Source: Macrostomum lignano (taxonomy: Eukaryota). Taken from it: a stretch of 59,036 nt of DNA. Positions within the stretch are counted from its first letter, which is position 1. Every line of letters starts with the position of its first letter. The DNA lies in assembly GCA_002269645.1 (NCBI GenBank), contig NIVC01004125.1, positions 1 to 59,036 on the forward strand. The letters are read 5' to 3'. The translations under genes were made by a program, and so were the position numbers. Shown here one piece after another: positions 3,731-57,950 of this stretch. Under the pieces are notes generated by a model. That model made no database searches. It was not told the DNA's origin and was given only the letters and a program-made list of their open reading frames with translations.

Positions 3731-3748
3731 CAGTACCATTTAAGTTCC

Positions 3749-6645: not shown

Positions 6646-9600
6646 TCCGCACAGAGGCCATCGAGCTCGCAAGTTGCAGCGAGACCGAGTTCAACTTCGA
6701 GTTGGACACGTGCATCAACCGCCTGGGCCCGAGCACACGGAGTCACGTGTTTAACTACTCATTCGAGTCCAAGACCTCCGGTCTGGTGTCCGTGCTGCAG
6801 CTCAGCCTGCAGATGCCTGCACAGTTGGTTACCATCTGCTCGTGAGTGGTACAGGTGTTCTAGGGGTACAGGAGGGTTGTTAGTAAGATTGGTTTGAATA
6901 TTTATAGGACTGTCACGCACTAAAATCCACTTGCAGCAACCTGCGAGTCTACAAAGACTGTCAGGACGCGGCGGTGCGCAGGTTCCAGTCCAGCTGGTCT
7001 CGCTGCAGCTGGTGGCGGGCCAAGCAGGAGGAGTACTTTTACCGCTTTGACGGCTTTTTCAATGGCGTATGCGAGACAAGTGCGTACTGGAATAATATTC
7101 TGTTGTACTTGTATTCTCAGCGTTCTGAGCTGAATGCGGTTCCACGTTGCTCAAACATCTCAAATCGCTTTGATCGACAAATACGCTTTATGATTTCTCT
7201 TCCTTCAATGAGCAATGCTTTAGCCCTGTTGTTCACCTATAGAGGGTTGTCGTGTCAGCCTTGGCCTCAGCAGCTCCCCCGACAAGCAGCTCTCCTCAGT
7301 TCGCACTTTCTACTTCTCCAGACTACAGCAGCTACGCCCACTGCATCAGCAAGCAGCTGGACAGCTACCTGGCCCGGCGCTGCAACCTGATGTTCTCAGT
7401 GCGCAACCGGCTCATGGTCTCTGACGAGTGCGGGCTCAGCAACGAGTACCTCGGCTGTCTAAATGCTCTGGTTGCCACCGGCTGCGTCGGGCGCGTCGCC
7501 GAGTTGCGATTTCAAGACGTGGCTCCGTACCTGCTTGGCTCGGCGGCCTGCCGGGATCGATACGACTTTGCCAGGCCTGCGTTCGGTGAGTAAACTACGA
7601 AGACCAAAGGCGTGCAGTAGTTTCTAGGGAATAAAAAACTTTAAAAGAGCTTTATAAAAAAACCAAGAAACGCAGACACAAGATCGCGATTTGTCTAGAT
7701 CTAAATATGTTCGGGTCACGGATGTTAGTCCTAGCCTGCTTTGGCTATCAGTGCCCCAGTGCACCCGTCTCTGCCCCAGTGTGCCCTATAACTGTACCTG
7801 TCAAAAGCACTTTACAATCTGTTTAGCGAAATCCTCTCCTCCCTCCGCCTGGCCGTGATTTTCCAGCCTTCGCCTACGACAATCCGACGTGCGTGCCGCG
7901 CTTTCAAGAGATGCTGCAGAAAATTCGTGACGACTTTCTTAACGCCGTCGGAGATCCGTTCGTGCGGGGTCCCTACCCCTACCCGGTTCTGATGAGCGGC
8001 TCCAGCCAAATTCTGCGGAACAAAATTTGTCCGTAAGGATTATTTTCCTCTGTGCTCTGCGTTGACGCGTCCGCGATGGCGGGACACTCGGGGAGTTGGA
8101 GCTTCTCACATCGACGCCCCATTTTGCTTCCTCATTCCGGCATCCAGTCTCCTACTTCGTATTTGTAAATTATTAATCAGCCTCATTCACTCACTGGATT
8201 CCAGTTTCTGTCGCAGCTACTCCCGCAGTGTTAGACGCGCATTTCGCAGGGATCCAGAGCTCAGGGCTAGAAAAAAATTAAGCTGTTCAATGCAGCAGAC
8301 AGACGGTTCTTAGCACCTCAGCGTTCTTACTCTTTGTCCCTATAGTCATAAAAATTTCAATTATGGAAATAAAAGCTGCATCTTCGAGCTATCTGATACA
8401 TCTACATCCGCACCTGCATCCGCATTCACATTCACACCCGCATCCGCATCCGCATCCGCATCCGCATCCACATCCGCATCCACATCCGCATCCACATCCG
8501 CATCCACATCCACATTCACATCCGCATCTGCATCCGCATCCACATCCGCATCCACATCCACATTCACATCCACATTCACATCCACATTCACATCCGCATC
8601 TGCATCCGCATCCACATCCGCATCTGCATCCGCATCCACATCCGCATCCACATCCACATTCACATCCACATTCACATCCACATTCACATCCGCATCTGCA
8701 TCCGCATCCACATCCGCATCCACATCCACACCCACATCCACATCCACATCCACATCCACATCCGCATCCACATCCACATCCACATCCACATCCACATCCG
8801 CATCCGCAATCGCATCCTCAAACATCTTGGAGAATGGAGGCATGCAGTCTCCGCAAAAAATTCCTCTGGAAGATTCGCGATCCTATTTTCATTTTTTCAT
8901 TCGCACCATTGACTCTGACGAACCTCTCCAACAGTGCACTGCAGAGATACGAGAGCCGGTCAACCGAAGTGAAGAGCCGATGCCAGCACGGCTACAATTT
9001 GATTCGGGCCACGTTTGACTGGAGACTTCTCACCAATCAGCTGGAGTTCATCTGTGACAATATCGACAGTGAGTCAGTCAACTTGTTTGGTTTCCACTCA
9101 ACACTTAATGCGTAATTTCAAGTATCTATGTATCGCTGGTACGCTCCTATATGAAAGTTCATTTGAGAGACCAGTTTTTCTTAAAAGTACGTTAGCCAAA
9201 TGAGAATTTTTTGTTCTTTGTCACTTAGTCGACGAGTTTCCACCTTCTAGACTTCCGATACGAGCTGTACATGCATTGGGGGCAGAGCAGCTCAGAGGTA
9301 AACACGTCTGATTCTCGTTTCACGACCCCTGGTTCGATTCCGTTCGCAGCTCGTAGTAACATTAATTCTCGGCTTCTGCGCGAAACATTGCCGTAGTTGT
9401 CGTGCGATTCACACTCACGAGGGCCAACCTGCAATGCACAGAGAATTTACATGCCTGAAGATTAGCACGAGTCGTGACTGCGTGCCTGCGTACGGTATCC
9501 GCGCGCTTGTGTGTACTCAGGAGCGAGCGGAACGGAGTTAGAATTGTCTCACCGCTATTCGTTGCGCCCACATTCACAGAAAGAAGAACAAAATACGAGT

Positions 9601-9856
9601 TGCTGTTGTCTCTTTCTGCTAACTGACCAATATGGCCACATATTTTGAAAAACAATATCAAAGCAAAAACTGGACTCTTATATTGTTCCGTCTTCTAACT
9701 GGCTCGTACTAGAGGTTCTCGTCCTTAACTACTAGCTAGAAAATTATAAATGCACATGCAGATGCGCATTTCGTAATAGAAGAGAAAGTTATCCAGTGCA
9801 GGCGACACGTTGAGGACGGAAGAACTAAATGCTTATGAAAAAACAGCTCAGACAAG

Positions 9857-18763: not shown

Positions 18764-19065
18764 GGGGGCGTAGTAGCCCAGTGGTCTGGCGCGGCGCTCT
18801 GATGTACCAGCGGCCCAGGCTCGATTCCTAGTGCAGTCAGATTAATTTGGGGCTGAATTGGAATCTCGGCTTGGCTCTGCTCGTGAAATTAACGGCCTTA
18901 AGAGAGCCAACCCCCCAAGGCACAGTGAAGTGTACATGCCTAACCATAAATAAAGTTAGGGCCGCTGTACACTCCTGTGTGAGTGTGTGCCTGTGCGTAT
19001 GACTGCGTACGCATCCTTGCGCTTGTGTGCCTGCTCAGGGGAGTCGGCGGAACGGGCAATAATGC
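18764..19065 (+). mobile_element. tRNA-derived SINE family B
   Basis: A-box TAGCCCAGTGG and B-box GCTCGATTCC; body nearly identical to 39971-40310 and 52591-52950. Confidence 0.85.
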
Positions 19066-21834: not shown

Positions 21835-31098
<9,264 letters not shown>

Positions 31099-35144: not shown

Positions 35145-38100
35145 ATGCTGCGCATTGGAATTGACGTTGGCGGCACCAACACGGATGCTGCTCTGTTGAA
35201 GGCCGCAGAAAATAGCACCGGCCGGCCCGCTGTGAGTCCTGCTTGTACACTGTCGATTGTTAATGGGGGGGAGATAGAATATGCAGGAACAGACACATTG
35301 TAGTTGTATGCATAGCCACCTAATAGCCTGCTGACGTGTAGATACGAAGGCGAAAAAGTACTTCTAGTCACCTATATTGATGGTCATTAATAGACCTTTG
35401 AACTGGAGGTCTGCCGAACCTTCCTGTGGGGGAAGACACCGAAGACGCCTTGTGACCCGGAGGAATCTGATGAGCTGTTGGGATGTTTTTGGTCGGGTCG
35501 GCGCGCTTCTTCGATAGATGGGTTCAGCTAGAGGTGATGAAGGTTTTCATTTTTTAGGTTGCAAAACTGACACAGCTTGCTCTCCTCGGTCGCTTCCTCG
35601 GAGGAAATTGTGTTTGGTAATGCAGCCATAAACTATGAGAGTCATGGTGAGGACCCGGTTGTGTCCGTTGGTTTTGATTCAAAAGGACCTTCTGGAGACG
35701 GTGCGATGGGTTCGGAACTGCCACTTAATATTTGGCGCTTGTTCACCAGCAAGGTTTTGCTACATGATTGATAACTGAGCGGGCAATCTAGTTTGGGCCA
35801 GGGAAGGAGCTGGAGGCATACCTGAGACGATTGAGGATCTCGAGTCAAGCCAGTTAATTACCCATTAGCCTTGAGTAACCTTGGTCTGCTGGAAAGTCAC
35901 CTTTATCTCTACCTGCGGATAGACGAGTTATCTGATACAGAACCCTAAATACTTGCTGCATAAAAACTGCTCTTTGACTTTGAACAGATCCTGCGCAGTG
36001 TCAAGACGCCAACAACTGACGACGTAACCGGAGGCGTCCGTCAGGCTCTGCGCGAAGTACTGCAAATCGGCTCTCCCGATGAAGTCAAGGAGCCTGTGCA
36101 GCTCGTCAGCATCGGCACCACGCACCTCATCAATGCTGTCTTGCAGCGTCGCGGCCTCGCCAAGATCTGCGTCGTCCGACTGGGCCGGCCAAGCACGGCT
36201 GCTGTACCGCCGTTCTCTGATTGGCCAGAGGACCTGCGGCAGGCGGTCCGTTGCCGCTGGCTGCTCGCTGACGGAGGCTACAATTATGATGGCGAGACTG
36301 TCATCACTGAGCCGAACGAGGCGCAGGTGAGCTGTCATGGAAAATATTCCTCAGCAAAATATGTGAATTTCAGAGTATTCTAAGCACTAAATGAAAATAT
36401 GCATAAATTGGGGTTGTAGCCTAGTGGTTACAGCGTCGGAATCACAACTTGAAGGTCGGGGGTTCCATTCCCGATCCCACTGGAACAATTTGTGTCCTTG
36501 AGCAAGACACTTACTCTGCATTGCTTCAGTTCACCCAGCTGTAAAATGGGTGCCCGCATTAGCTGGGATAATTAAGGGCGTGTTGCGACCTTCCCGTCCT
36601 TGGACTGAACAGCCGTACGCAGCCTTGAGATATGCCGCGCAATAGCTGCGGCTGAGCTGTCAGTTGCATATCTGGCCATTAGTGCAAACTGGCCTCTATC
36701 TCTATATGGTTACAGTAAGTTGTTATGTATTTCTCAACCCTTGCAGATAAAGGAATTCGCCAGGTCAACCAGCGCCGAAACTGGCTGCCGACGATTTGTA
36801 GTTGTGGGAGTCTTCGCTCCGGTGAGGCCAGACCAGGAGCTGCAAGCAGGCCGCTGGATCAGAGAGGCGGTGCCGGGCGCCAGCCTCACCCTGTCCCACC
36901 AGGTGGCTGGCAGTCTGGGTCTACTCGAGCGCGAGAACGCATCAGTGCTGAACGAGTGCCTGAAACCAGCCTGTGCGAGGGCGATTCGCGCATTCCAGGC
37001 TGCCATGACCGAAGTCGGATTGGCCTGTCCGCTGGTGCTGACGCTCAGCGACGGCACGGTGGCTACCGCACCGGACTGCCTCGACCGGCCCGTATCGATG
37101 CTGGGCTCCGGACCAACGAACAGCATGCGCGGGGCCGCATTTCTCACGGGCCTGTCCGATGCTATCGTTGCCGACATTGGAGGCACGACCACGGACATTG
37201 GCCTGCTTGTAGGAGGCTTTCCGAAGCCGGCCGCTGTCCGAGTTCGCATTGCGGGAGTGGCGACCAACTTCACCCAACCTGACGTCACATCGATTGCGCT
37301 CGGTGGAGGGTCCATCGTGACGGCTGGCCTGACTGGTGAATCGCCTTCTGTTGGTCCGCAGTCTGTGGGCTACAAACTCATAAAGGAAGCTCTGGTCTTC
37401 GGAGGGAACATCCCTACCGTAACTGATGCCGCCGTTGCTTCCTCGCCTCACGACGTGCAGGTGGGCGACGCTGATCGCCTCAGAGCTCGGCTCGCTGATG
37501 CAAACGAAGAGTCGCAGTCACTGAGTCGTCTGCTCAGGGCGGCCTACTCGATAGCTCTAACTAGCTTGGAGGCCGCTGTAGACGCCGCCCGTGTATCGAG
37601 TGCTCAGATGCCCGTCGTGCTGGTTGGAGGTGGCGCGGCTCTATTCTCGGGCGCCCGAAGCCTGGCCGGAATGCCGGTGCAAGTTCCCGCCGACGCCGGA
37701 GTGGCGAACGCGCTGGGCGCAGGTCTCTGCCAAGTAAGTGGCAACGTTGAGGCTACGTTGAATCTGGCGGATCCAGCCGAGCGAAAAGCCCGCCTAGACG
37801 AAGTCAAGGCTGCCGCTGTTGACGCAGCCGTTTCAAGAGGATCGGTGCGCTCTTCGACGCAACTAAAGGAACTACACGAGGTCCAGCTGCCCTATGTGCC
37901 AGGTGGTGCTTGTCGTGTCTCAGCCAGGGCTATTGGGGAGCTTGATATCTCTGCTGCTGCTCGTCTGAGCTTGCAGGTAAATGCGCATGCTGACGGTGCT
38001 GATGCCTCAGTTTTATCGGAGGAGGAGAGCGGTACCGCTGCCAAACAAGCTTCACGCAGTACCTGTGTGCCTGTGCCAGCACAGCGCGAGTTTGATGACC

Positions 38101-39320
38101 AAGGCGATTGGCTTCTCAGTGACTACGACACTCACTGTCTGAGCGTGGGCGCCGGGCTTATAGGTTGCGGGGGAGGCGGCAGCCCCTACGTCGGCCGGCT
38201 GATGCTCAACTGTCTGATGGAGAACGGTCATCGGCCTCGCATAGTGAAACTCGACCGAATGCTTGAGCTCAACGGAGCGGAAGGCCTGGTTGCCCTCCCT
38301 GGCTTTGTGGGCTCGCCGACAGTCTGCAATGAAAAAATCACTTCCGGTTTAGAGACAGCAACAGCCATTCGGCTCGTCCACCTGGCTGACGAGCTGCGTC
38401 GGCAGAAACCTGAGCAGCAGCTGCACTTTGTCGAAAGCTGCGATGCACTCGGTGGCGGTGAGGTCAAATGGGATGAAAAAATTGTCGGTGTAGCCTCCTT
38501 GGAGATCGGGGGATTAAACAGCATTGAGCCTCTGGTGGTAGCGGCTAAACTTGGTCTGCCCGTACTCGACATGGACGGCATGGGCCGGGCATTCCCGGAG
38601 CTGCAGATGGTTCTGCCGATGATTGGCGGTTGTCCAGCGGCCCCGGCTGCAATTGGCGATGAGTTCGAGCGAGGTGCCGTCATTGTCGAGTGTGATAGCG
38701 CCAAGGAGCTGGAGACGCACTTCCGCAGTGTCTGCGTCCAGCGTGGCTGTTCGGTTGGTATTGCGATGCCTCCACTGAAGCTGCAGCAGTGCAGAGAGCA
38801 CCTGCTGCCTGGCAGCTACACCAGAGCCTGGCGTCTCGGCGACGGCATCCTGCGAGCTCGTGCGGCCAAGACGGATCCAGTGGAAACCGCGCGCAGTTTG
38901 CTGAACGGTCGCGTGCTGTTGTCGCGCGGCAAGATTGCGGACGTCCGTCGAGTTACCAGCGGGGGATTCGCACGCGGCAGCCTGATTGTAGTTGAGGACA
39001 GGCGCGGAGAAAGCGAAGAGAGCGGCCTCGATGTGGAGTTCCAGAACGAGTACCTGCTCGTTAAGCGTCTGGGCGCGCCGGAAACTGAGGCACTGGCCTG
39101 CACACCGGACCTCATCATAGTGATGGACGCAGACTCCGGCGAGCCGGTAACGACAGAGGAGCTGCGCTACGGCCTCCGGGTAGCCGTGCTGGCTGCGCCG
39201 TGCCACCCGCGAATGGCGACGCCAGCCGCGCTCGCTGCCGTCGGGCCGCAGGCGTTCGGCTTCGACGGAATCAAGTACCGACCCTGCGCCGAGTATCGGC
39301 TCGATGCTGACGAAGCGTGA
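35145..39320 (+). CDS. Hydantoinase/oxoprolinase A-type domain fused to a C-terminal DUF917 domain, 999 aa
   Basis: Exons 35145-35231, 35988-36326, 36747-39320, all phase 0, no frameshift. Motifs GIDVGGTNTDA, VSIGTTHLINAV, GSGPTNSMRGA, DIGGTTTDIG, SIALGGGS and ANALGA mark hydantoinase A. GAGLIGCGGGGSPY, EIGGLNS, DMDGMGRAFPELQM, GKIADV, FQNEYL and PDLI...TTEELRYG mark DUF917. Confidence 0.9.
36410..36677 (+). mobile_element. SINE family A, intronic
   Basis: A-box TAGCCTAGTGG, B-box-like GGTTCCATTCC and CORE-like GTGTCCTTGAGCAAGACACTT...CACCCAGCTGTAAAATGGG; in intron 2 of the hydantoinase gene. Confidence 0.85.
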
Positions 39321-39732: not shown

Positions 39733-42700
39733 TCAGACGAGGCTGAAGCCCTCCGTCTCGTCGATTGCCAAGCAGCTTCTGGCGCAGGTCTCCCTGTCCG
39801 GGTAGCGCGGCAGGTCGAGCATGTTGTAGCAGGTGTGCGCCACCGGCAGACACCTGGGGCTGCAGTGGACCACCTGGATGCGCAGGCGAACTGCTGACAT
39901 TCCCTGCGTAGCGAGTAGGTTTTGGTTGGTAATCCTGGTTGAAGCAATGCACTGCTCTCAGGCTTCGGAAGCGCTCTGATGTACCAGTGGCCCAGGCTCG
40001 ATTCCAAGTGCAGTCACATTAATTTGGGGCTAAATTGGAATCTCGGCTTGGCTCTGCTTGTGAAATTAACGCCATTGAGGGCCAACCCCAAAGCACACTG
40101 AAGTGTACATGCCTAACGATAAATAAAGTTAGGGCCGCTGTACACTCCTGTGTGAGTGTGTGCCTGCGCGTATGACTGCGTACGTATCCGCGCGCTTGTG
40201 TGCCTGCTCAGGGGAGTCGGCGGAATGGCAGCAATGCCTCTTGCCGGTTGTGTGACAATGTCGCATAAAGTGCACCAGGGTGCACACAGCCCCTGCCTCC
40301 AATTAAAAAATTTTCCGAGACTTCATAAGCGCGAGCTCGTTATACTTATCGCCACTAAAGTAGGGACTCACCTGCACCGGCACGCGGTCGCTTCCCGTGA
40401 GGAAGCGCAAGAAGCGCCGCTTATTATCCTCGTCCAGATCCTGGTGAAACACCGACCAGAAGTTGGCGATGAGCTGCTGGTAATCCGGGCTGGGGTTCAC
40501 GTAATGGCCCCCTGCTCCAGCTGGTCCCAGTCGAAGCAGCCGCTCTCGCCATTGATGATCGCCTGCAGCTCCTGCGGCTCCAGCAGCGGCAGCACCGGGC
40601 TGCCGCAGGCGCGCTCGAATCCTGCCTGAAAAGCATCAAAGGCGTCGCGACAGCTGCGGTTCAGCACGAAGTCCACATAGGCGGACACGTAGGACTCTCG
40701 GTTGCCAAGGGTGACGCGGTCCTCCGGACTAGCCGACAGCGGCACGCGCTGCACGTGGTCGAACATTTTGGTCTCGATCTCGAAGTTCAACTCGAGTTCT
40801 TCCACTGAGTTCGCCGTCTCCGCATCAAGCAGCGACTGCAGGCTGTTCCCCACGGTCGGGTCGAGCTCTTTGAGGTCGTCAAGAGCAACCGGCTGTCGCA
40901 GAAGCTTCTTGAAGAGAGCCATCGGGAACGGCACAGCGGCCAGGATGCTGTTGTAGATTGCCAGGCCCAGCAGTGTTCCGATGAGGCTGAAGTTCTCGGG
41001 GCACTCCAGCGTGCTGTGGTTGAACCAGACAAGATTCGAGTCAAAGCAAGTGAACATGCCGTACACGGGGTCAAGGATCTGGCGAAAGATCAACAGAAAG
41101 AATTCTTTTGTTAGGCCACCCTCGTCAACGGCTTCTTCGCCCTTGAAGGTGATCCGAAGCGGCTTCTTCAGCTCGGCCGGGTGGCAGCTGCTGAGGCTGA
41201 CTACTGCATCCTGGATCAAGGCCTGCCGCGCCACCCGCAGCACTAGGAAGGGGCTACGCATGTCAAAGATTGCGCCGAACGTAAAACCCTGAAATAGGTT
41301 AAACATCATCGCCTCGCGAAAGGCCTGCTCCATCTGCATCCGAGCGTCAACCTTCAGCAGCTCCATCTTGGCGTGACTGTCGAACACGAATGGATATTTG
41401 AGAAAGCTAAACTGGTTCCGGTTTTCCGTCCAGGCGCGGTAGTCCTTCTCCAGGGGCACCCGGTCGCGAATTTCCGCGAGGTGAAACGAAGATGCGGGCA
41501 GGCGATCGCGTCGGTCACTGTTGAGGGCGTGCAATCGCTTCAGAAAGTCCAGGCACGGTCGGAGACGCCGGATCCGCTGCTCGTCTGCGTCGACTTTTGC
41601 AGCCTCATTTGCCTCACCATTGGCGTCGCAGTCGCTGGACGCGAGCAGGTGCTGAGCAGCCCGGATCAGGCAGCGCACCAGGCGGGCAAAGTGGCGAAGC
41701 CGGAGCTCCATGATCCAACTCAGCAGGACAGTCATCAGAGGTCGCGGTAGTCGGAGCACCAGCTCTGCCAAGGCCGGCTGCAGCGGTCCCGGTGACTCGA
41801 ACTCCGGACTGAGCGGCAGAAGCAGCAACAGACGAAGGCATTCGGCGTCTGCCAGGTGGGCTTCTTCGCGTTCTGTCAAGTCCGTTAGAAGCTCGGTCTG
41901 CGCCGCCAGCAGCTCCTGGCGTCTCTCCGGGTTACTGACCGCAGCTGCGCCCAGCCGTTTCTGCAGAAACTCGGCCGCTGCGTCGAGGTCGAGGCCATGC
42001 CAGCCCGGCCGAGGATTCTCGTGTTCAATATCGGGGAGCAGGAAGGCGCGGGCGTAGGCAGCGGGACACGCGGCGATGGCCAAACAGCCCGGCCAGTCAC
42101 CGTCGGGATCGCACGAGTCGAGCGACAAAAGGCCCTCCGGGATGGATGACTTTGCGGCCATCGGAGGCCCGCCGACTCGTAAGAATGCACGCCACCGCCA
42201 GCGGAAACATCAACGTCACCTGCACCGCCTGGGCCCAGGGTCAACGGCCAGGGTTTATTGCGACGCTAGCTGAGGGACCAACAGTACCAAATGCGTAAAC
42301 CCGGCCTCCTTGACAGCTGGCGTACGTGACTGAGGTGCCGCAGTCGGCGGTTACCACCCGAGAGCCCATCAGCTCCGCAACCTGTCGCGGTAGCGACTCG
42401 CTGGAGTTGCTTCCGTGGCCCAGCTGCCGAGGTCGCCGGCGCCAAATGTAAAGAGGCCGCCATCAGCAGTGACGGCAGCGGTGTGCTCGTGCCCGCAGGC
42501 AATCCGACGCACCCGTCGGTTGCGCAGGGCGGAGCACTCGAGCGGCCGGGTAGCAAAAGCGAGCAAAAGGCCCTCCGGGATGGATACTTTAAGAATCGCA
42601 CGGCCCGCCGACTCCAGCGGAAAAGAATGCACGCCCACCGCCAGCGCAAACATCAACGTCACCTCAACACCGCCAGGGTGGGCCCAGGGTCAACGGCCAG

Positions 42701-43888
42701 GGTTTATTGCGACGCTAGCTGAGGGACCAACAGTACCAAATGCGTAAACCCGGCCTCCTTGACAGCTGGCGTACGTGACTGAGGTGCCGCAGTCGGCGGT
42801 TACCACCCGAGAGCCCATCAGCTCCGCAACCTGTCGCGGTAGCGACTCGCTGGAGTTGCTTCCGTGGCCCAGCTGCCCGAGGTCGCCGGCGCCAAATGTA
42901 AAGAGGCCGCCATCAGCAGTGACGGCAGCGGTGTGCTCGTGCCCGCAGGCAATCCGACGCACCCGTCGGTTGCGCAGGGCGGAGCACTCGACTGGTAGCG
43001 GCCGGGTAGCATTTCCGTCCTCGTGCCGCATCCGAGCTGGCCGCGGTCATTGGAGCCCCAGGCCAGAAGGACAGCGCTGTGCGACAATACAAAGCTGTGC
43101 CGCCCACCGCAAGCGATCTGGCGGACTGGCAGACCGCCAAGGCGGCGCACTGGCGCCAGTCCGGAGCCGGTCTGACAGTGGCCGCGGCCCAGCTGGCCAT
43201 GCGAGTTGTCGCCGAACGCAAATACCTGGTGGTCTGCGGTGAGCACCAAGCTGTGGCCGCCTCCAGCAGCCACCAAAACCGCCCGGTGACCCATCAGGGG
43301 GGTCACCGGCCCTACTCTGAGCGAGCCACCGCCGCCTGACCCATCGTCCGCTCTGGGGCCCAGTTGGCCGCAGGAGTTGCTGCCCCACGCTAAGACCTGG
43401 CCTTCCGAAGTCAGCGCCAGCGAGTGCCGTCCACCGGCCTCCAGCTGCGTCACTCGACTCGACGTTGCCAGCGACTTGGCGAGACCCGGCACTGGCGCGA
43501 ACTCTTCGTCCTCGCCGTCGCCACTGCGGGACAGTGCGCTGCCGTCAGATGTCAAGAGCAGACAGTGACTGTCACCAGCTGCCACTGTGAGAACAGCAGC
43601 CGCCAATGTCGGTTTCAGGGCCACTTCGGTTGGCAGAGCCTGCCACGAGGTACGCGAGTCGTTAGCCGGGGACTTGGAGAGCGGCTCGCCAACCATCAGA
43701 AGCTTCGGTGTAGAATGCTGAGGTTCGCTTGTCCTGATGCTCTGCTTGGGAGCTGGCGGTTTTTTCCGGGTTGGCTGCTGATCAGAGAGTTTGCCACCAC
43801 TCTGCTGCGTTGACTTTGGCAGTAGTTTCCGCGAATCAGTTTGCTGTAGCAGTGGCTGCTTCGGGCGAGCCTTCTCGGCGCTGTCCAT
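39733..43888 (-). CDS. HERC4: Small HERC-type E3 ubiquitin ligase (RCC1 repeats + HECT), HERC3/4-like
   Basis: Exons ~43888-40372 and 39903-39733 (phase 0, PVQ|GMS). RCC1 repeats (AAGDSHCL, AGGRHSL, WGSNSCGQLG, FGDNSHGQLG). HECT motifs YPFVFD, LKKPLRITFKGEEAVDEGGLTKEFF, FLRFLTGSDRVP and catalytic AHTCYN. Several small frameshifts and a ~450-bp internal duplication. The symbol names the closest vertebrate type, not proven orthology. Confidence 0.88.
39971..40310 (+). mobile_element. SINE family B (slightly 5'-truncated), in last HERC intron
   Basis: Matches 18764-19065 and 52591-52950; ends in an A-rich tail AATTAAAAAA. Confidence 0.85.
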
Positions 43889-45175: not shown

Positions 45176-48100
45176 CTACTCAATCAGCTTGGACTTCAGG
45201 AAGTCAACGAAGTCGTCAATAAGCGACGGCCAGGCGCCTGAAATGTCGGATTGCAGAAATGTACTTTTATTTATCTGCGCTTTTGCCTGTACCACAGGTA
45301 CTAGAATAACTAGATGGGGCACTCGGCGCATTTGCGACCCCCCCGTCCTTGGACTGAAGAGCCGTACGCAGCCTTCAGATACACATCTGCCCAGTGGGGC
45401 AGGTGTAATCAATAATAATAATAAACATTGTGCCACATTGCTCAATAGCCCGCAGCCTACCATTGGATCATAGTCGGCCAGGTTGTCCGGGTTGCTCACA
45501 AAGTCGAAAAATAAATTCCAGGTGTCGCGAGAGACTCCGCGCACCTTGGCCTCGCGCAGGAAACGAAACCAGGACTCGAGCAGCTGACCGAAGGCCCGCC
45601 ATTCAGCAGCAGGTTCCAGTAGGGGATGGCAGTCTCCACAGCTGCGGGGTGGCGAATTCGTCAGATGAAACTACTAACAGTAGAATAAAATCGGCGAATC
45701 GGTGAGTGGGGATAGGGATAGGGATCCCGGGAGTCGGGATTTCGGAAGTCAGGATAAGGACTCGGGGGTCGGGATAGGGATCTCGGTAGTCGGGATAGGG
45801 ATTTCGAGAGTCGGACCTCGGGAGTCGGGACCTAGGAGTCGGGACCTCGGATTCGGGATCTCATAAGTCGATATCCGGATCGGGACCTTTGGAAGTCGGA
45901 TCTCCGGAGTTTGGGATCTCCGGAGTCGGATCGGGATCTAGGGAGTCGGGATAGGGATTTCGAGAGTCGGGACCCGGGAGTCGGGTCGATATCCGGATTC
46001 GGGACCTTTGGAAGTCGGGATCTCCAGAGTCGGGATCTCCAGATTCGGATCGGGACCTCGGGAGTCAGGATGGATCTCAGGAGTCGGGATCGGGATTTTG
46101 GGAGTCGGGATCGGGATCTCGAGAGTCGGAATCGGGACCTCGGGAGTCGGGATCGGGACTTCGGAAGTCGGGATCTCCAGAGTCGGGATCGGGACCTCGG
46201 AGTCAGGATCCGGATCTCAGGAGTCGGGATCGGGATTTTGGGAGTCGGATCGGGATCTCGAGAGTCGGAATCGGGACCTCGGGAGTCGGGGTCACAAAAC
46301 TCGCGGATAGGGACCTGGAGTCGGATCGGGATCTCGAGAGTGCGGGATCTCGGGAGTTGGGATTGGTTTATCAAAGATCCGAATTTTCGTCGCAGACTTA
46401 CGCAGCACTTTGGAGTCCCGCGACTCCCTAGCGAAGTCAAACGTGAAGGCGTGCAGGTCGCGCAGCTGCCCGACGTCCTGGGCCAGAGCCCGCTCGTCTG
46501 GGCCAGCCGGGAGCGCAGCTTGTCGAGGCTGTCGGCGCCCAGACGGCCGAGGCCGGTGACGAATTCGGCTCTGGAGAACTCGCCCTGAACACCGGCCTGC
46601 AGCTTCCAGGCCAGCACGAGGGCGGTGAGGGACACCGGGTCGATGCGCAGATCGTCTAACAGGCGACAAACTCCGGTAGGGTTGATGCGGTCGGGGTCAT
46701 CCTGAGAGTAAAGGCAGCGGTGCACAATACTGCTCATAAGCCTTGGTATACGGTTCGGGAACCTTAGTTGAATTTGGCGTTCCCAGGCAAACCGCCTTTG
46801 AGAGTCATTCACAGAACATGTGGGCTGTCGTGCGATTCACAGCCATGAAGGCCAGTTCCAAAGGCACAGAGAGTCAGGACCGCTGTACACCCTGTGTGAG
46901 CGTGTGAGTGCGTGCCTGCGTACAGTATAGGCTCAGAAGTCAGTGGAATGGGCAGAATTGCCTCAGCGCTGGTTGTGTTGGCTCAGAAGTCAGTGGAATG
47001 GGCAGAATTGCCTCAGCGCTGGTTGTGTTGGCTCAGAAGTCAGTGGAATGGGCAGAATTGCCTCAGCGCTGGTTGTGTTGGCTCAGAAGTCAGTGGAATG
47101 GGCAGAATTGCCTCAGCGCTGGTTGTGTTGGCTCAGAAGTCAGTGGAATGGGCAGAATTGCCTCAGCGCTGGTTGTGTTGGCTCAGAAGTCAGTGGAATG
47201 GGCAGAATTGCCTCAGCGCTGGTTGTGTTGGCTCAGAAGTCAGTGGAATGGGCAGAATTGCCTCAGCGCTGGTTGTGTTGGCTCAGAAGTCAGTGGAATG
47301 GGCAGAATTGCCTCAGCGCTGGTTGTGTTGGCTCAGGAGTCAGTGGAATGGGCAGAATTGCCTCAGCGCTGGTTGTGTTGGCTCAGAAGTCAGTGGAATG
47401 GGCAGAATTGCCTCAGCGCTGGTTGTGTTGGCTCAGAAGTCAGTGGAATGGGCAGAATTGCCTCAGCGCTGGTTGTGTTGGCTCAGAAGTCAGTGGAATG
47501 GGCAGAATTGCCTCAGCGCTGGTTGTGTTGGCTCAGGAGTCAGTGGAATGGGCAGAATTGCCTCAGCGCTGGTTGTGTTGGCTCAGAAGTCAGTGGAATG
47601 GGCAGAATTGCCTCAGCGCTGGTTGTGTTGGCTCAGAAGTCAGTGGAATGGGCAGAATTGCCTCAGCGCTGGTTGTGTTGGCTCAGAAGTCAGTGGAATG
47701 GGCAGAATTGCCTCAGCGCTGGTTGTGTTGGCTCAGAAGTCAGTGGAATGGGCAGAATTGCCTCAGCGCTGGTTGTGTTGGCTCAGAAGTCAGTGGAATG
47801 GGCAGAATTGCCTCAGCGCTGGTTGTGTTGGCTCAGAAGTCAGTGGAATGGGCAGAATTGCCTCAGCGCTGGTTGTGTTGGCTCAGAAGTCAGTGGAATG
47901 GGCAGAATTGCCTCAGCGCTGGTTGTGTTGGCTCAGAAGTCAGTGAAATGGGCAGAATTGCCTCAGCGCTGGTTGTGTTGGCTCAGAAGTCAGTGGAATG
48001 GGCAGAATTGCCTCAGCGCTGGTTGTGTTGGCTCAGGAGTCAGTGGAATGGGCAGAATTGCCTCAGCGCTGGTTGTGTTGGCTCAGAAGTCAGTGGAATG

Positions 48101-50620
48101 GGCAGAATTGCCTCAGCGCTGGTTGTGTTGGCTCAGAAGTCAGTGAAATGGGCAGAATTGCCTCAGCGCTGGTTGTGTTGGCTCAGGAGTCAGTGGAATG
48201 GGCAGAATTGCCTCAGCGCTGGTTGTGTTGGCTCAGAAGTCAGTGGAATGGGCAGAATTGCCTCAGCGCTGGTTGTGTTGGCTCAGGAGTCAGTGGAATG
48301 GGCAGAATTGCCTCAGCGCTGGTTGTGTTGGCTCAGAAGTCAGTGGAATGGGCAGAATTGCCTCAGCGCTGGTTGTGTTGGCTCAGAAGTCAGTGGAATG
48401 GGCAGAATTGCCTCAGCGCTGGTTGTGTTGGCTCAGGAGTCAGTGGAATGGGCAGAATTGCCTCAGCGCTGGTTGTGTTGGCTCAGAAGTCAGTGGAATG
48501 GGCAGAATTGCCTCAGCGCTGGTTGTGTTGGCTCAGAAGTCAGTGGAATGGGCAGAATTGCCTCAGCGCTGGTTGTGTTGGCTCAGAAGTCAGTGGAATG
48601 GGCAGAATTGCCTCAGCGCTGGTTGTGTTGGCTCAGGAGTCAGTGGAATGGGCAGAATTGCCTCAGCGCTGGTTGTGTTGGCTCAGAAGTCAGTGAAATG
48701 GGCAGAATTGCCTCAGCGCTGGTTGTGTTGGCTCAGGAGTCAGTGGAATGGGCAGAATTGCCTCAGCGCTGGTTGTGTTGGCTCAGAAGTCAGTGGAATG
48801 GGCAGAATTGCCTCAGCGCTGGTTGTGTTGGCTCAGAAGTCAGTGGAATGGGCAGAATTGCCTCACCGCTGGTTGTGTTGGCTCAGAAGTCAGTGGAATG
48901 GGCAGAATTGCCTCAGCGCTGGTTGTGTTGGCTCAGAAGTCAGTGGAATGGGCAGAATTGCCTCAGCGCTGGTTGTGTTGGCTCAGAAGTCAGTGGAATG
49001 GGCAGAAATGCCTCAGCGCTGGTTGTGTTGGCTCAGGAGTCAGTGGAATGGGCAGAATTGCCTCAGCGCTGGTTGTGTTGGCTCAGGAGTCAGTGGAATG
49101 GGCAGAATTGCCTCAGCGCTGGTTGTGTTGGCTCAGAAGTCAGTGGAATGGGCAGAATTGCCTCAGCGCTGGTTGTGTTGGCTCAGAAGTCAGTGGAATG
49201 GGCAGAATTGCCTCACCGCTGGTTGTGTTGGCTCAGAAGTCAGTGGAATGGGCAGAATTGCCTCAGCGCTGGTTGTGTTGGCTCAGAAGTCAGTGGAATG
49301 GGCAGAATTGCCTCAGCGCTGGTTGTGTTGGCTCAGGAGTCAGTGGAATGGGCAGAATTGCCTCAGCGCTGGTTGTGTTGGCTCAGGAGTCAGTGGAATG
49401 GGCAGAATTGCCTCAGCGCTGGTTGTGTTGGCTCAGAAGTCAGTGGAATGGGCAGAATTGCCTCAGAAGGCGTTGCGTCAGGGCGGCCGCACCTATCCAG
49501 CAATTAGTAATATTATTACGAGGGGTGTCCCCGAAAAGTTCTGACACTTTTAATTCCAGAGCAAAAACAGTCGCAACTGCAAGCACAACTTTGGTGTCAT
49601 TTTAAAGCGGCACATCTCTGCTTTCCACTGAATTAAGTCGCGTGTATTTTGGTCATTTCATTCAAAAGTTACGTGTCTTAGAGTAAAAGTTAAAAAATAT
49701 AAAAGTCGATTTTTTGTGTTCAAAGAAACGAATTGTAGTCATTCATCATTATCATCCTTCAAGGCAGCCTTGTCAACGTAGTCTCCACCTGTAGCAACAC
49801 ACTTTTCACATCGCTTGAGCATTCCGTGCCTTCGGCCTTTCAAATGCACACTCATGATGGTGTCAAAAATCACAAAAATCAAAACACTTGACCTTTGCAA
49901 GGTGCAAAACAGTGAGATTTGCTTACAAGTGACGGAGTGTATAAAATACTCAACACAGAAATGGTGGACGGTAAGAGAGGGATGCACTGTAAATTAGAGC
50001 CGTTTTGTGTACGCTCGTAAACGATTGTACTTGCGTGCTGCAAACAAGATCCATAAAAAAGCTATGTACTTCACCTTTTACTCCTGTAAGACTATCTGCA
50101 GCATTTTGATGGTTTTTCACACACAATTTTTGAATGAAATGACCAATATACACGCGACTTAATTCATGACATGGGCACCCCTAGTATATTATCTTTAATG
50201 TATTATTCTATTCTTTTTCATTTATATGATCCTACTGCTCAACTTCCCTCAACCGAATGCATTCAACGACACCACAGTGATCGCTAGCCAATGGCAGGCC
50301 TCCCGCACCTGACTAACAACATCACCCCCAATTAGGCAGCTTCTGAGTCCTGGTTCTCAGGGCGGGAGGGATTAAGATCGCTACGTCCCGTGGTTGAGTC
50401 TCACCTGAGACCGGTAGGAGTTGAACAGCGCGGCCACCTTTCTGGTGTCAACAGACAGCCGCTCGTCATATTTGGCGGGGCTGCTGTAATAATCGTCCAC
50501 TGCTGCATCCAGGCGCCAGGCATTCTGGCTGAGGCACTGCAGCGCCACCGGCTCCTGCGCCTCTGTGCACTGCACGAACCGCTGCACGAGCTCACGCTGT
50601 TCTCGCCGTAGTCGGTTCAT
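45176..50620 (-). CDS. DCUN1D1: DCN1-like protein (NEDD8 E3; UBA-like + PONY/cullin-binding domain)
   Basis: Exons 50620-50405, 46701-46402, 45641-45461, ~45238-45176. Motifs MNRLRREQRELVQRFVQCT...WRLDAAVDDYY, LDDLRIDP...VLAWKLQA..QGEFSRAEF, FTFDFA, TAIPYWNLLL, SRDTWNLFFDF and YD..GAWPSLIDDFV. Three apparent 1-nt indels. Confidence 0.92.
45330..45392 (+). mobile_element. SINE family A 3' fragment, intronic
   Basis: TTGCGACCCCCCGTCCTTGGACTGAAGAGCCGTACGCAGCCTT matches the 3' part of 36410-36677. Confidence 0.7.
45700..46360. repeat. Degenerate GGGAGTCGGGATC-type repeat with a ~140-bp higher-order duplication, DCN1 intron 2
   Basis: Mixed GAGTCGG/GATCGG/GACCTCG units; 46021-46150 recurs at ~46170-46290. 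Confidence 0.88.
46850..46930 (+). mobile_element. SINE family B fragment directly upstream of the 50-bp satellite
   Basis: AAAGGCACAG...AGTCAGGACCGCTGTACACCCTGTGTGAG...GTGCCTGCGTAC matches family B (AGTCAGGGCCGCTGTACACTCCTATGTGAGTGTGTGC). Confidence 0.7.
46931..49466. repeat. 50-bp tandem satellite (GCTCAGAAGTCAGTGGAATGGGCAGAATTGCCTCAGCGCTGGTTGTGTTG)n, ~51 copies, DCN1 intron 1
   Basis: Near-identical head-to-tail units without spacers, with a few recurrent single-base variants. Confidence 0.98.
49519..50184 (-). mobile_element. Non-autonomous Tc1/mariner (mariner-type) element with transposase C-terminal remnant
   Basis: TA|CGAGGGGTGTCC left end and GGGCACCCCTAG|TA right end. A 38-bp inverted repeat with 1 mismatch at ~49631-49668 and ~50128-50165. 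The minus strand encodes KRCEKCVATGGDYVDK, typical of mariner transposase C-termini. Confidence 0.85.
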
Positions 50621-52590: not shown

Positions 52591-52950
52591 GGGGGGCCAT
52601 AGCCCAGCAGTAGTGCAGCTGCTTTGGTATGCCAGTGACCCAGGCTCGATTCCAAGTGCAGTCACATTAATTTGGGGCTGAATTGGAATCTTGGCTTGGC
52701 TCTGCTTGTGCAATTAATGGCCTTGAGAGCCAACCCTCCCAAGGCACAGTGAAGTTTACATGCCTAACGATAAATAAAGTCAGGGCCGCTGTACACTCCT
52801 ATGTGAGTGTGTGCTTGCATACATAACCGCGCACTTGTATGCCTGCTCAGGGGAGTTGGCGGAATGGGCAGTAATGCCTCTCGCCAGTTGTGTACCTATG
52901 TCGCTTAAAGTATGCCAGGGTGCACACAACCCCCCTGCCTCTAATAAAAA
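52591..52950 (+). mobile_element. SINE family B, full length
   Basis: A-box-like TAGCCCAGCAG, B-box GCTCGATTCC, same body as the other copies, A-rich tail. Confidence 0.85.
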
Positions 52951-54875
52951 AATAGATATGTTTTGCAATTTAGATACTAGACTGATTTTTTAAGCAACAA
53001 GAGATTTTTGCATTTTCAAGGGTTATTAAAGTATTGTACGTAACGCAATAAGTACTACACATTTCAGAAATTTCCATATACCATTGTTGCAAATTGTAGC
53101 AGCTCATGATTATTATTATCACAAATTATGTAAACCTATGTGAATAGTAATTTTTGGATATTAAAGATGTATGTTCAGTCATGTTTACTACATAGCAATC
53201 AAACTTTTACTTTTTAGTTATGCTTAAAAAATTTTCCTCATAGAATATTTTCTACAAAGAGCAGTAGGAAAAGTTTAAGGATCTGAAATGTAATATTAAA
53301 TTGCTTTCTTATTTTTGTATGCACTTTCAAACAATTATCGAAAGGTGCTATATTATCGGTGGTGTGCGCACTGTGCGGTCATTCATTTTGTCTGCTGCCT
53401 TTTTGTCGTCGGGCCTTTTCATATTGCTTGCTCTGGTTCCAGAACCAGAACCAATTTGTGAAGTATAACTTTTTGTCTCCATAACTATAGGGAAATACGT
53501 GCTATAAAGTTTTTATTATTGAATGACAATCGCCAAGAAGAAAGTGAAAAATTGTGCTAAGTTAGGTTGTTAAGGCAGTCAAATATTAACAGAGTTTAAT
53601 AGTTATACTGGTGTTTTTCTTGGAATTCCGAACCGATTCTGCTTCTGTAATTGGAGGCATTGGTAATATGAAAAGGCCCGTCGTCGTCTGCCGGCAGACG
53701 TAAAAACTTTTTTAAAAAGTGAAATATAGCTACGAAAACTGTTAAGCTTAATTTTCATAACAAGAAATTGCAAGTCATGCAAAAAGTTATTATGTAATAT
53801 TTTTTTGCATGCGTAATATTGTTTAACGCAGTATTTCAAAGAAAGATATATAATTTAAACATCCGTTAAAAAAGTGAATGCTCGATCATGAGCATTGTTA
53901 TGATCCCTGGCCCCATCCCGATGATAATAACGTATTTGCTGTCCTGTTGCAAAGTTTATATAAACTTGTAACTTCGAATTATATTTATTAATTTTAAATT
54001 TAATGATAAAATTCATTATTTCTTGACCTATATTTGACTAGAATTTCTCCTTTGATATCGAATTTCTCTTTCTCATAAGTTAAAATAATGCATGCATTAG
54101 ACCCCTTATGGCCCTATTCAAGGGTGTTGCCATAGATTTTATGGTAGAGGGGATAAAGCCAAGAGTTCTACATGTAAATGTACACTTATACATATTTTTT
54201 AGTATTTTCAGCACTCAGCACTCATTTTGGTGTTGCAGCCACTTTATTTTAGTGCCACAGGCACATTTTGGTGCTGCAGATATTATGTTTTGTTACACTT
54301 AAGCAAATTGATTTCTATACTGGGATACAAACTTGGGAGACAAAGCAATGGTATTCCCCACCATCTTTTACTGGAAGTATGTCCCTTTGGCAATACTTGT
54401 AAAATATAAGTGCATTTGCTGCTGCTATGCTAGGCCCACCTTTTTTGTCTGTGCTTATAGTATTATAATATAGTATGATACTATAATATAATACAATAAC
54501 ACTCAACTCCAATGAGCCAAAAGTAAAAGACAGCCAATTCTAGAATAAATTTCTTAAAAATTTTGTTTTGTCAATTTTTCTCTAAAAAACAATTATTTAA
54601 TTTTTAGTACTAGTAAATCTTTTTTTTTCATTTTTTAATGCCAATGCCAGCAATCTTTTAATCAATATTTGATATGGACTGATAACCTATATATTTATTT
54701 CAATCACCTACTGTGTGATTTGCTCTCCATGAAGTGTACATAGTACTTATTTTATAATTACTTATTTAAATTCTTTTCGTTTCATTAGCCATGAAATTTT
54801 GTTCAAAGATTCATAGAAAAATTCTAGCTGCTCTTTCATATACTATATTTTTTACAAAACTTTACTCACTAAATG

Positions 54876-56979: not shown

Positions 56980-57950
56980 ATTCTAGCCAACGCATTTCAT
57001 CAAACATAAGACGTCGTCAGGGCAAATTCAATCAACCTAAGATCACACCACCAATGTATTTAAGCAAAATCACTGTACAGTCCAGAGGCGGGTCAACACA
57101 GTCCGGTAGAATTTAGAAAATGCCAAGTACACAACAAAGTGAGAGAGAAAAAAAAATAATAAATAGGCATAGCTCTGCTCACAGTACTCTTAGCTTACGC
57201 TCCACCCCATTGCTAGCAAGCTGCACATTCAGGTTGGGTTTGTGCATTCTGATATATGAAGCTTCGATAATCTTAAGCTGGTGGTCAAATTTGCACCCAT
57301 CCAGCACTTTAAAGAGCTGAATCGGTTCACCGTCACAGCATTTTTTACAAACAAGCAGATGGTCATTAATCGCAGAGCTTTTTAGCCAATGTTCCCTAGC
57401 TCTAGTGTGCAGGTGTCGCTTCGTTTTTCCAATGTAGGAAATGCTCTGATCCTCAGAGCAGCGAAATTGGTAAACAACACCAGCCCTTAGAGCAAGTGGA
57501 ACAGCTGACTTGAGCCTGCTAGCATAGCAACCAATCTTTTCGGTGCGAAACACAATCCTAACGGTGCACTTAAGCCATTTGCTAAACATTTTCTCAAGTT
57601 TTTTCTTAAAGTCAAGTGAAGCGTTGCCAAAAAATAGGAGAACCAACAGAGCGTCCCAAGAATCTATCTCCGGTTGCCTGGGTCTCGCATTGCTAGAAAC
57701 TTTCTTAGTGACAAATGCATTGATAATACGGCTGACAAAACTAAGAGGGTAACCGTTAGATCTAAGGATTTTAGTCAGGGCACAAACCTCTTGGTAAAAT
57801 AAACTCCAAGAACTGCTCACCTCGTAGGCTCCATGAAGAAGGCACCTAACTAACCCGGATTTCCAGTGAGTTGGACATAAAGCATGAAAACTTAACATCA
57901 GCCCAGTAAATGTCGGTTTACGGTAAACTTTCATAAGAGGACAGTGTCCA
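56980..57950 (-). mobile_element. 5'-truncated Penelope-like retroelement (RT C-terminus + GIY-YIG endonuclease)
   Basis: ORF 57179-57934: VYRKPTFTG...HALCP..WKSGLVRCL...L..NGYP (PLE RT thumb region), then GVVYQFRC...YIGKTKRHLHTRAREH...SAINDH...IIEASYI...KPNLN (GIY-YIG). The RT catalytic core is absent. Confidence 0.92.
56986..57023 (-). ncRNA. Candidate minimal type-I hammerhead ribozyme in the Penelope 3' terminal region
   Basis: Minus strand GCC-CUGACGA-C-GUC-UUAUGUUU-GAU-GAAA-UGCG-UU-GGC. It has the core CUGANGA...GAAA...UH, stem I GCC/GGC, a 3-bp stem II and a self-complementary AUGCGU stem III. Confidence 0.65.

What the first reader, a model, noticed from the sequence alone, without database searches (positions are those of the whole stretch)
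46850..49500. A 2.5-kb, 50-bp satellite apparently born in situ from the 3' region of a tRNA-SINE
Seen: the unit GCTCAG--GAGTCAGTGGAATGGGCAGAATTGCCTCAGCGCTGGTTGTGT aligns by hand at about 39/50 with the SINE family B segment GCTCAGGGGAGTTGGCGGAATGGGCAGTAATGCCTCTCGCCAGTTGTGT (52845-52894; similar at 40206-40255). The ~80 bp just left of the array (46850-46930) match the SINE segment that precedes that motif in intact copies. Inference: one SINE copy in DCN1 intron 1 had an internal 50-bp segment amplified about 51 times. This would be a snapshot of SINE-to-satellite birth, with parent-family copies in the same window.
Basis: partly seen in the sequence, partly recalled or inferred. Interest (0 to 1): 0.78.

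Follow-up and report, generated by a model that had tools for sequence, protein, structure and literature searches.

The report
SINE-derived minisatellite in a flatworm intron
A 50-bp piece of an old, decayed SINE retroposon in intron 1 of a Macrostomum lignano DCN1-like gene has been copied head-to-tail about 51 times on this contig but only about 6 times on a second, near-identical contig, so this is a clear but ordinary case of a mobile-element fragment turning into a variable tandem repeat.

Summary
TRF finds a 50-bp array at 46930-49466: 50 full units plus a 37-nt end unit, no indels, 18 differences in 2500 bases. The unit matches the body of a tRNA-type SINE family found elsewhere in the window (41/50 to a 3-copy consensus; 0 of 2000 shuffles reach the score). 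About 108 bp to the left of the array (46822-46929) continue colinearly into the SINE segment that lies upstream of that motif. The right flank is not recognisably SINE, and no SINE head is detectable.

The window is a whole contig of Macrostomum lignano (Mlig_3_7). A second contig of the same assembly carries the same genes at 98.5-99.8% identity. It has the same array at the same junctions, but with only 5.7 units.

The locus is therefore a SINE-derived minisatellite (VNTR). It began before the two copies diverged and now differs nine-fold in length between them.

The SINE copy that holds the array is a mosaic of "family B" and a second SINE at 9278-9605, so no copy in the window is its direct parent.

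This kind of repeat is already described: SINE-derived satellites in squamates and TE-derived minisatellites in humans. It is a new member of a known kind. Whether the unit occurs elsewhere in the genome could not be tested.

The parts
46822..46929 (+). Decayed SINE body segment directly left of the array. It corresponds to family B consensus positions ~111-246, with a 27-nt and a ~17-nt deletion.
   Evidence: Positions 46871-46928 against consensus 186-246: z=20. Positions 46820-46870 against consensus ~111-158: z 4.7-5.4. It also aligns with 9398-9498 of the second SINE. It is identical in the second contig.
46930..49429 (+). 50 full 50-bp units, consensus GGCTCAGAAGTCAGTGGAATGGGCAGAATTGCCTCAGCGCTGGTTGTGTT. 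They are homologous to SINE consensus positions ~264-313.
   Evidence: Position 8 is A in 38 units and G in 12; G is the state in all SINE relatives. Rare variants recur in multi-unit blocks (units 37-41 and 44-48 both read G a c a a).
49430..49466 (+). Truncated terminal unit (37 of 50 nt) at the right-hand array boundary.
   Evidence: The same truncated unit and junction occur in the second contig (L023 13331-13367).
49467..49530 (+). Right flank, not demonstrably SINE-derived. The first ~13 nt (AAGGCGTTGCGTC) share only CGTTGCG with the matching place in the 9278 element.
   Evidence: p between 0.03 and 0.8 depending on scoring scheme and target. No scheme is convincing.
52594..52952 (+). 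Full-length family B SINE with an A-rich tail, flanked by the target-site duplication ATAGATATGTTT. A relative of the array-bearing copy.
39973..40310 (+). Family B SINE copy with its 5' head diverged or truncated.
18764..19065 (+). Family B SINE copy with an intact tRNA-like head (box A TAGCCCAGTGG, box B GGCTCGATTCC). It is 3'-truncated at about consensus position 300.
9278..9590 (+). A second SINE with a different tRNA-like head (box B GGTTCGATTCC) and the same body. It shares diagnostic states with the array locus: TGTCGTGCGATTCACA, CTCAGGAG without the extra GG, and GAATTG.CTCA.CGCT.
   Evidence: Unit against this element: z 7-8.6. Left flank against this element: z 8.7-15.
46402..46700 (-). 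DCN1-like exon 2 (coordinates approximate). Its acceptor ...CTTTACTCTCAG| lies at 46701-46702, about 230 bp from the array. This copy has a 1-bp deletion (~46494) relative to the second contig.
50405..50620 (-). DCN1-like exon 1 (UBA domain). Intron 1 is therefore ~46701-50404 and contains the array in antisense orientation.
   Evidence: (PF14555 UBA_4, E=4e-9).

Best explanation
What it is: a non-coding minisatellite (VNTR) that arose from the body of a tRNA-type SINE copy lying antisense in intron 1 of a Macrostomum lignano DCN1-like gene.

Proposed sequence of events:
1. Shown: an old SINE copy sits at this site. Only its body from about consensus position 111 onward is still recognisable.
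2. Inferred: a ~50-53-bp segment of that copy was duplicated. The likely route is slippage or unequal exchange between the short TTGTGT direct repeats that bracket exactly this segment in intact relatives.
3. Shown: the array already existed, with its present junctions, before the two duplicated or allelic copies of this region in the DV1 genome diverged by about 1%.
4. Shown as a state, inferred as a direction: one copy now has 5.7 units and the other 50.7. The very low diversity of the long array (3 rare variant types carried by 6 units, i.e. about 3-6 mutation events in 2.5 kb, apart from an A/G polymorphism shared with the short array) and the recurrence of rare variants in multi-unit blocks point to recent expansion by unequal sister-chromatid exchange or replication slippage in the window copy.

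Function: no function is indicated. The long open reading frames through the array exist only because the unit lacks stop codons on the + strand.
For: - Array anatomy.
- Unit homologous to the SINE: z 12.5-14.5, 0/2000 shuffles; second SINE, z 7-8.6.
- Colinear left flank.
- Flank and unit show the same mixed subfamily character, as expected if both come from one element copy.
- Relatives are true retroposed tRNA-type SINEs (target-site duplication, A-rich tail, box A and box B).
- The second contig, NIVC01002673.1, has the same array and junctions with 5.7 units. Its flanks are 98.5-99.5% identical and carry SNPs on both sides.
- The assembly is known to contain 180 Mb of duplicated blocks at 95% identity or more: (PMC5730564).
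- TTGTGT occurs at consensus positions 255 and 308, spacing 53, bracketing the amplified segment.
- No protein relatives of the array ORF.
- The same anatomy (an array with one extended terminal unit running into the SINE) is the common form of the SINE-derived satellites described in squamates: (PMC10702118).
Against: - The right flank cannot be shown to be SINE tail, and the SINE head is not detectable. That a complete SINE once sat here is therefore inferred.
- The ~17 nt that include the upstream TTGTGT in relatives are missing at the left junction, so the proposed initiating repeat is not preserved at the locus.
- 6-mer direct repeats at that spacing occur in 62% of shuffles of the consensus.
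- The direction of change (expansion rather than contraction) is not proven.
- Copy numbers rest on a PacBio assembly with known errors: 64% error-free bases by REAPR.
- Only about 75 kb of this genome could be examined, so other loci carrying this unit are not excluded.
Confidence: 0.78

Rival explanations
1. The array is the variable internal region of a composite mobile element, an SVA-like SINE subfamily that carries a tandem repeat. It arrived here already repeated and occurs at many loci, so it was not born at this site.
For: The array-bearing copy belongs to neither SINE lineage seen intact in the window, so an unsampled subfamily exists. The squamate study found sSat loci in large numbers in some genomes.
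Against: All four intact or partial relatives in the window carry the segment once. No other array or partial array of the unit occurs in the window or in the 15.8 kb of the second contig. The nine-fold length difference between the two copies shows that most of the amplification happened at the locus in any case.
Confidence: 0.1
2. The copy number is an assembly artefact: either the 50.7-unit array is over-extended, or the 5.7-unit array is a collapse of the same allele.
For: Mlig_3_7 has only 64% error-free bases by REAPR, and the genome is rich in repeats. The window copy also has a 1-bp GG-to-G difference in DCN1 exon 2 that could be a consensus error.
Against: The two contigs differ by SNPs and small indels on both sides of the array, so they are separate copies and not one locus assembled twice. 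The long array has an aperiodic pattern of variants and no indels in 2.5 kb. A 287-bp array is easily spanned by single reads.
Confidence: 0.12
3. The satellite came first: a pre-existing 50-bp tandem repeat donated one monomer to the 3' body of the SINE family.
For: None specific.
Against: The array is joined colinearly to more than 100 bp of upstream SINE body. The segment is part of a body shared by two SINE lineages with different tRNA heads, so it predates their split. The array itself is nearly homogeneous and hence young.
Confidence: 0.03

Closest known systems
SINE-derived satellites (sSats) of squamate reptiles (Vassetzky, Kosushkin & Ryskov 2023, Mob DNA 14:21; PMC10702118)
   Same: Both are tandem arrays whose unit is a portion of a tRNA-related SINE. 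Typically one terminal unit is extended and runs on into the neighbouring SINE sequence on one side only. Longer arrays are more homogeneous. Origin is by local duplication followed by amplification.
   Different: Those were described from Squam1-3 SINEs in reptiles, often at many loci, with up to ~1000 units and a subtelomeric preference. Here there is one locus (plus its duplicate) in a flatworm, with 50-bp units and 5.7 or 50.7 copies. Number of loci and chromosomal position are unknown. The authors state that it is uncertain whether sSats exist outside squamates.
TE-derived minisatellites of the human genome (Ahmed & Liang 2012; PMC3389668)
   Same: A tandem repeat is initiated inside a transposable-element copy and expanded by local duplication of the unit. 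Some cases have an incomplete terminal unit, attributed to slipped-strand mispairing. Others have 5-20-bp direct repeats flanking the unit (the Haber-Louis model).
   Different: Most human cases have only two units. This array has 51 units and a documented nine-fold difference between two copies of the locus.
SVA VNTR region and other SINEs with internal repeats
   Same: SINE-related sequence joined to a variable-number tandem repeat.
   Different: In SVA the VNTR is part of the mobile unit and travels with it. Here the intact relatives carry the segment once, and nothing shows that the array is mobile.
SMalpha-related W-element W36.2 of Schistosoma mansoni (PMC8490949)
   Same: A satellite-like repeat in a flatworm with strong similarity to a SINE-like retroposon family.
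   Different: There the ~335-bp repeated monomer resembles the whole SINE-like element, which carries a hammerhead ribozyme. Here only a 50-bp internal piece is repeated and no ribozyme is involved (Rfam: no hits).

Membership tests
SINE-derived tandem repeat (sSat / TE-derived minisatellite) | Head-to-tail tandem array | tested here: met
   TRF: period 50, 50.7 copies, 98% matches, no indels; unit map.
SINE-derived tandem repeat (sSat / TE-derived minisatellite) | Unit homologous to part of a SINE family dispersed in the same genome | tested here: met
   41/50 to the family B consensus, z=14.5, 0/2000 shuffles; z 7-8.6 to the second SINE; 3 family B copies plus 1 related copy in the window.
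SINE-derived tandem repeat (sSat / TE-derived minisatellite) | Array flank continues colinearly into the adjacent SINE sequence (extended terminal unit) | tested here: met
   Met on the left side: a single HSP covers SINE 185-300 and window 46872-46978, and homology runs back to ~46822. Not met on the right side. One-sided extension is the common form in the squamate study.
Minisatellite / VNTR | Unit of roughly 10-100 bp, array of 0.5 to tens of kb, and copy number that varies between copies of the locus | tested here: met
   50-bp unit, 2537-bp array; 5.7 units at the same junctions in contig NIVC01002673.1. Caveat: both numbers come from an assembly, not from reads.
Classical satellite DNA | Very long arrays at several loci, usually heterochromatic (centromeric or subtelomeric) | not testable with these tools
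   Only ~75 kb of this genome could be read. No chromosome positions are available. The array is 2.5 kb and lies inside a gene intron.
tRNA-derived SINE (the parent family) | 5' head with RNA polymerase III box A and box B at tRNA-like spacing | tested here: inconclusive
   By reading, the 18764 copy has TAGCCCAGTGG and GGCTCGATTCC 43 nt apart, and the 9278 copy has GGTTCGATTCC. ARAGORN and Rfam tRNA models do not score them. The array-bearing copy itself has no detectable head.
tRNA-derived SINE (the parent family) | Retroposition hallmarks: A-rich tail, target-site duplication, dispersed copies | tested here: met
   The copy at 52594-52952 ends in AATAAAAAAA and is flanked by ATAGATATGTTT on both sides. 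Three dispersed family B copies are ~84% identical to each other.

The most novel reading that the evidence does not exclude
This SINE body segment may be a recurrent seed for tandem arrays across the M. lignano genome, which is unusually rich in tandem repeats. The locus would then be one of many independent or spreading SINE-derived arrays. That would extend the 'non-random satellite genesis from SINEs' proposed for squamates to a distant invertebrate phylum, with an early (6-unit) and a later (51-unit) stage of one array preserved side by side in one genome.
Probability: 0.15. Interest if true: 0.55.

Novelty: new member of a known kind. Interest (0 to 1): 0.33.

Why it matters
Well-resolved cases that link a dispersed SINE to a tandem array are few. 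The one systematic study covers only squamate reptiles and leaves open whether the phenomenon exists elsewhere.

This locus is a clean example from a flatworm:
- the parent-type elements are nearby;
- the SINE-to-array junction is preserved;
- two length states (about 6 and about 51 units) exist in duplicated copies of the same region.

It could therefore be used to time and dissect minisatellite expansion in a laboratory model animal. It does not change what is known about how such repeats arise, and nothing suggests a function.

Tried and rejected
1. Right flank as SINE tail. By eye, CAGGGCGGCCGCACC...CAATTAGTAA resembled the family B tail, and CGTTGCG resembled the 9278 element. Shuffle tests with three scoring schemes were not significant.
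2. SINE head upstream of 46822. An apparent box B (GGTTCGGGAACC at 46752-46763) and a TTGAATTTGGCG motif were no better than dinucleotide shuffles against any of four heads.
3. Searching for the unit elsewhere.
   - The metagenome scan with GGAATGGGCAGNANTGCCTC gave 21 single hits that match only the pattern itself.
   - The SINE head pattern gave no hits in the viral or prokaryotic genome collections.
   - A translation of the array found no predicted proteins among 5.8 billion.
   - None of these collections covers this animal's genome, so they say nothing about other loci.
4. Getting more of the genome. A look-up of the GIY-YIG ORF found nothing on record.
5. Rfam and ARAGORN gave no hits in the window or on a SINE head.
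6. Hairpin-driven slippage. The unit contains the palindrome CAGCGCTG, but DNA folding of unit dimers is unremarkable (z -1.8 and -1.5).
7. The 11-nt match between the unit (GGAGTCAGTGG) and the 20-bp array at 3747-4217 is at the level expected by chance (my estimate is about 1-2 such matches in the window). I dropped it.
8. Block duplication inside the array. The shared context of the two rare C-variant units is suggestive only (rough p of 0.05-0.1 by my estimate).

Full report
**Observation**

Tandem Repeats Finder reports one array at 46930-49466 with period 50, 50.7 copies, 98% matches and no indels. Cut into register, it is 50 full units plus a truncated 37-nt unit. Only four positions vary (8, 17, 29, 37), and 18 of 2500 bases depart from the consensus GGCTCAGAAGTCAGTGGAATGGGCAGAATTGCCTCAGCGCTGGTTGTGTT.

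**The SINE family**

blastn with the element at 52594-52952 finds two further copies on the + strand, at 18796-19065 and 39973-40310, each about 84% identical to it.
- The 52594 copy ends in an A-rich tail and is flanked on both sides by ATAGATATGTTT, a target-site duplication.
- The 18764 copy has a tRNA-like head with box A (TAGCCCAGTGG) and box B (GGCTCGATTCC) 43 nt apart.
- ARAGORN and Rfam do not score these heads as tRNA. The 'tRNA-type' label therefore rests on the promoter boxes.

**Homology of unit and flank**

- The same blastn gives one colinear alignment from SINE positions 185-300 to window 46872-46978. It runs from the left flank straight into the first unit (72.6%, E=2e-8).
- Against a three-copy consensus, the G-variant unit matches 41/50 (z=14.5) and the majority A-variant gives z=12.5. 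No shuffle out of 2000 reaches either score.
- The left flank 46871-46928 matches consensus positions 186-246 with z=20.
- With gentler scoring, homology continues to about 46822 across a 27-nt deletion (z 4.7-5.4).
- Further left there is nothing significant against any of four SINE heads.
- To the right of the array nothing significant is found against the family B tail or the tail of the related element at 9278.

The locus is thus an array joined on its left to about 108 bp of decayed SINE body. It has no recognisable SINE head and no recognisable SINE tail.

**A second relative, and the parent question**

The left flank also hits 9398-9498. That region is a SINE (9278 to about 9590) with a different tRNA-like head (box B GGTTCGATTCC) but the same body.

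The array locus shares several states with this element rather than with family B:
- the exact 16-mer TGTCGTGCGATTCACA;
- CTCAGGAG without the extra GG;
- GAATTG.CTCA.CGCT.

Elsewhere it agrees with family B. At sites where the two lineages differ, the flank sides 13 times with the 9278 element and 11 times with B. The unit sides 4 and 9 times respectively. Two points follow. No copy in the window is the direct parent. And flank and unit have the same mixed character, as expected if both come from one element copy of an unsampled or older subfamily.

**Organism and second copy of the locus**

- The hydantoinase/DUF917 ORF at 36720-39320 is 99% identical to Macrostomum lignano protein BOX15_Mlig028193g1, whose longest contig is 59,036 bp, the length of the window.
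- The look-up shows that the window is contig NIVC01004125.1 of GCA_002269645.1. The same protein is also encoded on NIVC01002673.1.
- That second contig has the same gene order (hydantoinase, HERC-like, DCN1-like). Megablast blocks across the compared stretch are 94.4-99.8% identical, about 99.5-99.8% through the hydantoinase and 3' HERC part and lowest where the DCN1 intron 2 repeats differ by indels.
- At the corresponding place it carries the same array with exactly the same left and right junctions, but only 5.7 units, of pattern a a G G G plus the same 37-nt end unit (L023 13081-13367).
- The 400 bp on either side are 98.5% and 99% identical, with SNPs and small indels on both sides. None of these differences falls inside the SINE-derived flank.
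- The assembly paper states that Mlig_3_7, from the DV1 line with extra large chromosomes, contains 180 Mb of duplicated blocks at 95% identity or more, and that simple and tandem repeats make up 15% of the genome (PMC5730564).

The two contigs are therefore separate duplicated or allelic copies. The array predates their divergence, and its length now differs nine-fold.

**Mechanism**

*Shown:* the array is SINE-derived, it existed before the two copies split, and it is length-variable.

*Inferred, initiation:*
- In family B the amplified segment is bracketed by TTGTGT at consensus positions 255 and 308, 53 nt apart. The unit-to-unit junction (GGTTGTGT-T-GGCTCAG) reads like a fusion of the downstream repeat with the sequence after the upstream one.
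- This fits the Haber-Louis model of initiation between short direct repeats, cited for TE-derived tandem repeats.
- It is not proof. Such 6-mer pairs occur in 62% of shuffled consensuses, and the upstream repeat is missing from the left junction of the locus.

*Inferred, direction of change:*
- Apart from the A/G polymorphism at position 8, which the short array shares, the long array carries only 3 rare variant types on 6 of its units in 2.5 kb, i.e. about 3-6 mutation events. That is far less than the roughly 1% divergence of the flanks.
- Rare variants recur in multi-unit blocks: units 37-41 and 44-48 both read G a c a a.
- This suggests recent expansion in the window copy by unequal exchange or slippage, rather than contraction of an old long array. 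Homogenisation could hide the difference, however.

*Structure:* DNA folding of unit dimers is unremarkable.

**Function**

None is indicated.
- The array lies antisense in intron 1, about 230 bp from the 3' splice site of exon 2.
- The 854-codon ORF through it exists because the + strand of the unit has no stop codon in any frame. It has no relatives among 5.8 billion proteins.
- On the gene-sense strand each unit has no GT, three AG dinucleotides and one CTGAC. It therefore offers no cryptic donors but possibly decoy acceptors. This is speculation only.
- The copy with the long array also has a 1-bp deletion in exon 2, and its annotated product is 177 aa instead of 246 aa. This may be a consensus error or decay of a redundant gene copy.

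**Comparison with what is known**

- *Closest description:* the SINE-derived satellites of squamates. Their usual form is an array with one longer terminal unit that runs on into the SINE on one side, exactly as here. Longer loci are more homogeneous. The authors say it is uncertain whether such repeats exist outside squamates (PMC10702118).
- *In humans:* 23% of minisatellites and satellites are TE-derived and grow by local duplication (PMC3389668).
- *In flatworms:* one satellite-like W-element family of Schistosoma mansoni resembles the SMalpha SINE-like retroposon, but there the monomer is about the size of the whole element (PMC8490949).
- *Literature on this species:* two full-text searches on Macrostomum (one for tandem repeats and transposable elements, one for SINE) listed no paper whose title or abstract concerns SINEs or SINE-derived repeats in the genus. 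I did not open the individual hits.

**Verdict**

- It is imprecise on three points: only one side is SINE, family B is a cousin and not the parent, and the locus is a minisatellite rather than a satellite.
- The kind is known, and this is a new, well-resolved member from a new phylum.
- The main open question is whether this unit forms arrays elsewhere in the genome. It needs the whole assembly, which these tools could not reach.

Noticed in passing
window ~46494 (DCN1-like exon 2, minus strand): The window copy lacks one G (GCTC-GTCTGG against GCTCGGTCTGG in the second contig), which shifts the reading frame. The annotated product is 177 aa here and 246 aa on the other contig. This is either a consensus error or decay of a redundant gene copy, and it is the same copy that carries the long array.
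   Followed up: partly
window 42118-42997 (HERC-like gene, minus strand): A ~440-bp stretch is present twice in tandem here (copies ~91% identical) but once in the second contig (L023 8903-9326 aligns to both). It repeats an RCC1-type peptide. No HERC gene is called on the window, while a 1081-aa product is called on the other contig.
   Followed up: partly
window 23500-23770 (-) and ~5000-5320 (-): Two copies of a different tRNA-type SINE family. Box B is GGTTCGATTC, and the body contains TTGAGCAAGAC.CTTAACTCTGC and CACCCAGCTGT. It is unrelated to the array.
   Followed up: no
window 49629-49676 and 50119-50166: A 48-bp inverted repeat pair (91.7% identical) about 540 bp apart in the same DCN1 intron, 160 bp to the right of the array. 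It looks like the ends of a small DNA transposon (MITE).
   Followed up: no
window 45728-46349 (DCN1-like intron 2): A G-rich compound tandem repeat (TCGGGAGTCGGGATC and 21-, 42- and ~140-bp higher orders). It differs by indels between the two contigs (94% identity block), so it is a second variable array in the same gene.
   Followed up: no
window 29077-30694; 1508-2027; 27825-28226; 8398-8805; 3220-4217; 19809-20259: Very long simple repeats and minisatellites: (TAGA)404, (GTCT)130, (CTGT)100, (ACATCC)68, an 11-bp x46 array next to a 20-bp x23.5 array, and a 30-bp x15 array. This is in keeping with the reported 15% simple and tandem repeat content of this genome.
   Followed up: no
window 57179-57934 (-): A 251-aa ORF with a GIY-YIG nuclease domain (Pfam E=2e-6), possibly from a Penelope-like retroelement. 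No gene with this product is on record.
   Followed up: partly
window 32630-34354 (-): A 574-aa uninterrupted ORF with BIR and RING domains (an IAP-like protein). It is not among the called genes of the locus table.
   Followed up: no
window 18764-19065: This family B copy loses homology at about consensus position 300, inside the segment that is amplified at the array locus and within a few bases of where the array's last unit is cut off. The sequences that follow are unrelated. This may be coincidence or a fragile point in the element.
   Followed up: partly
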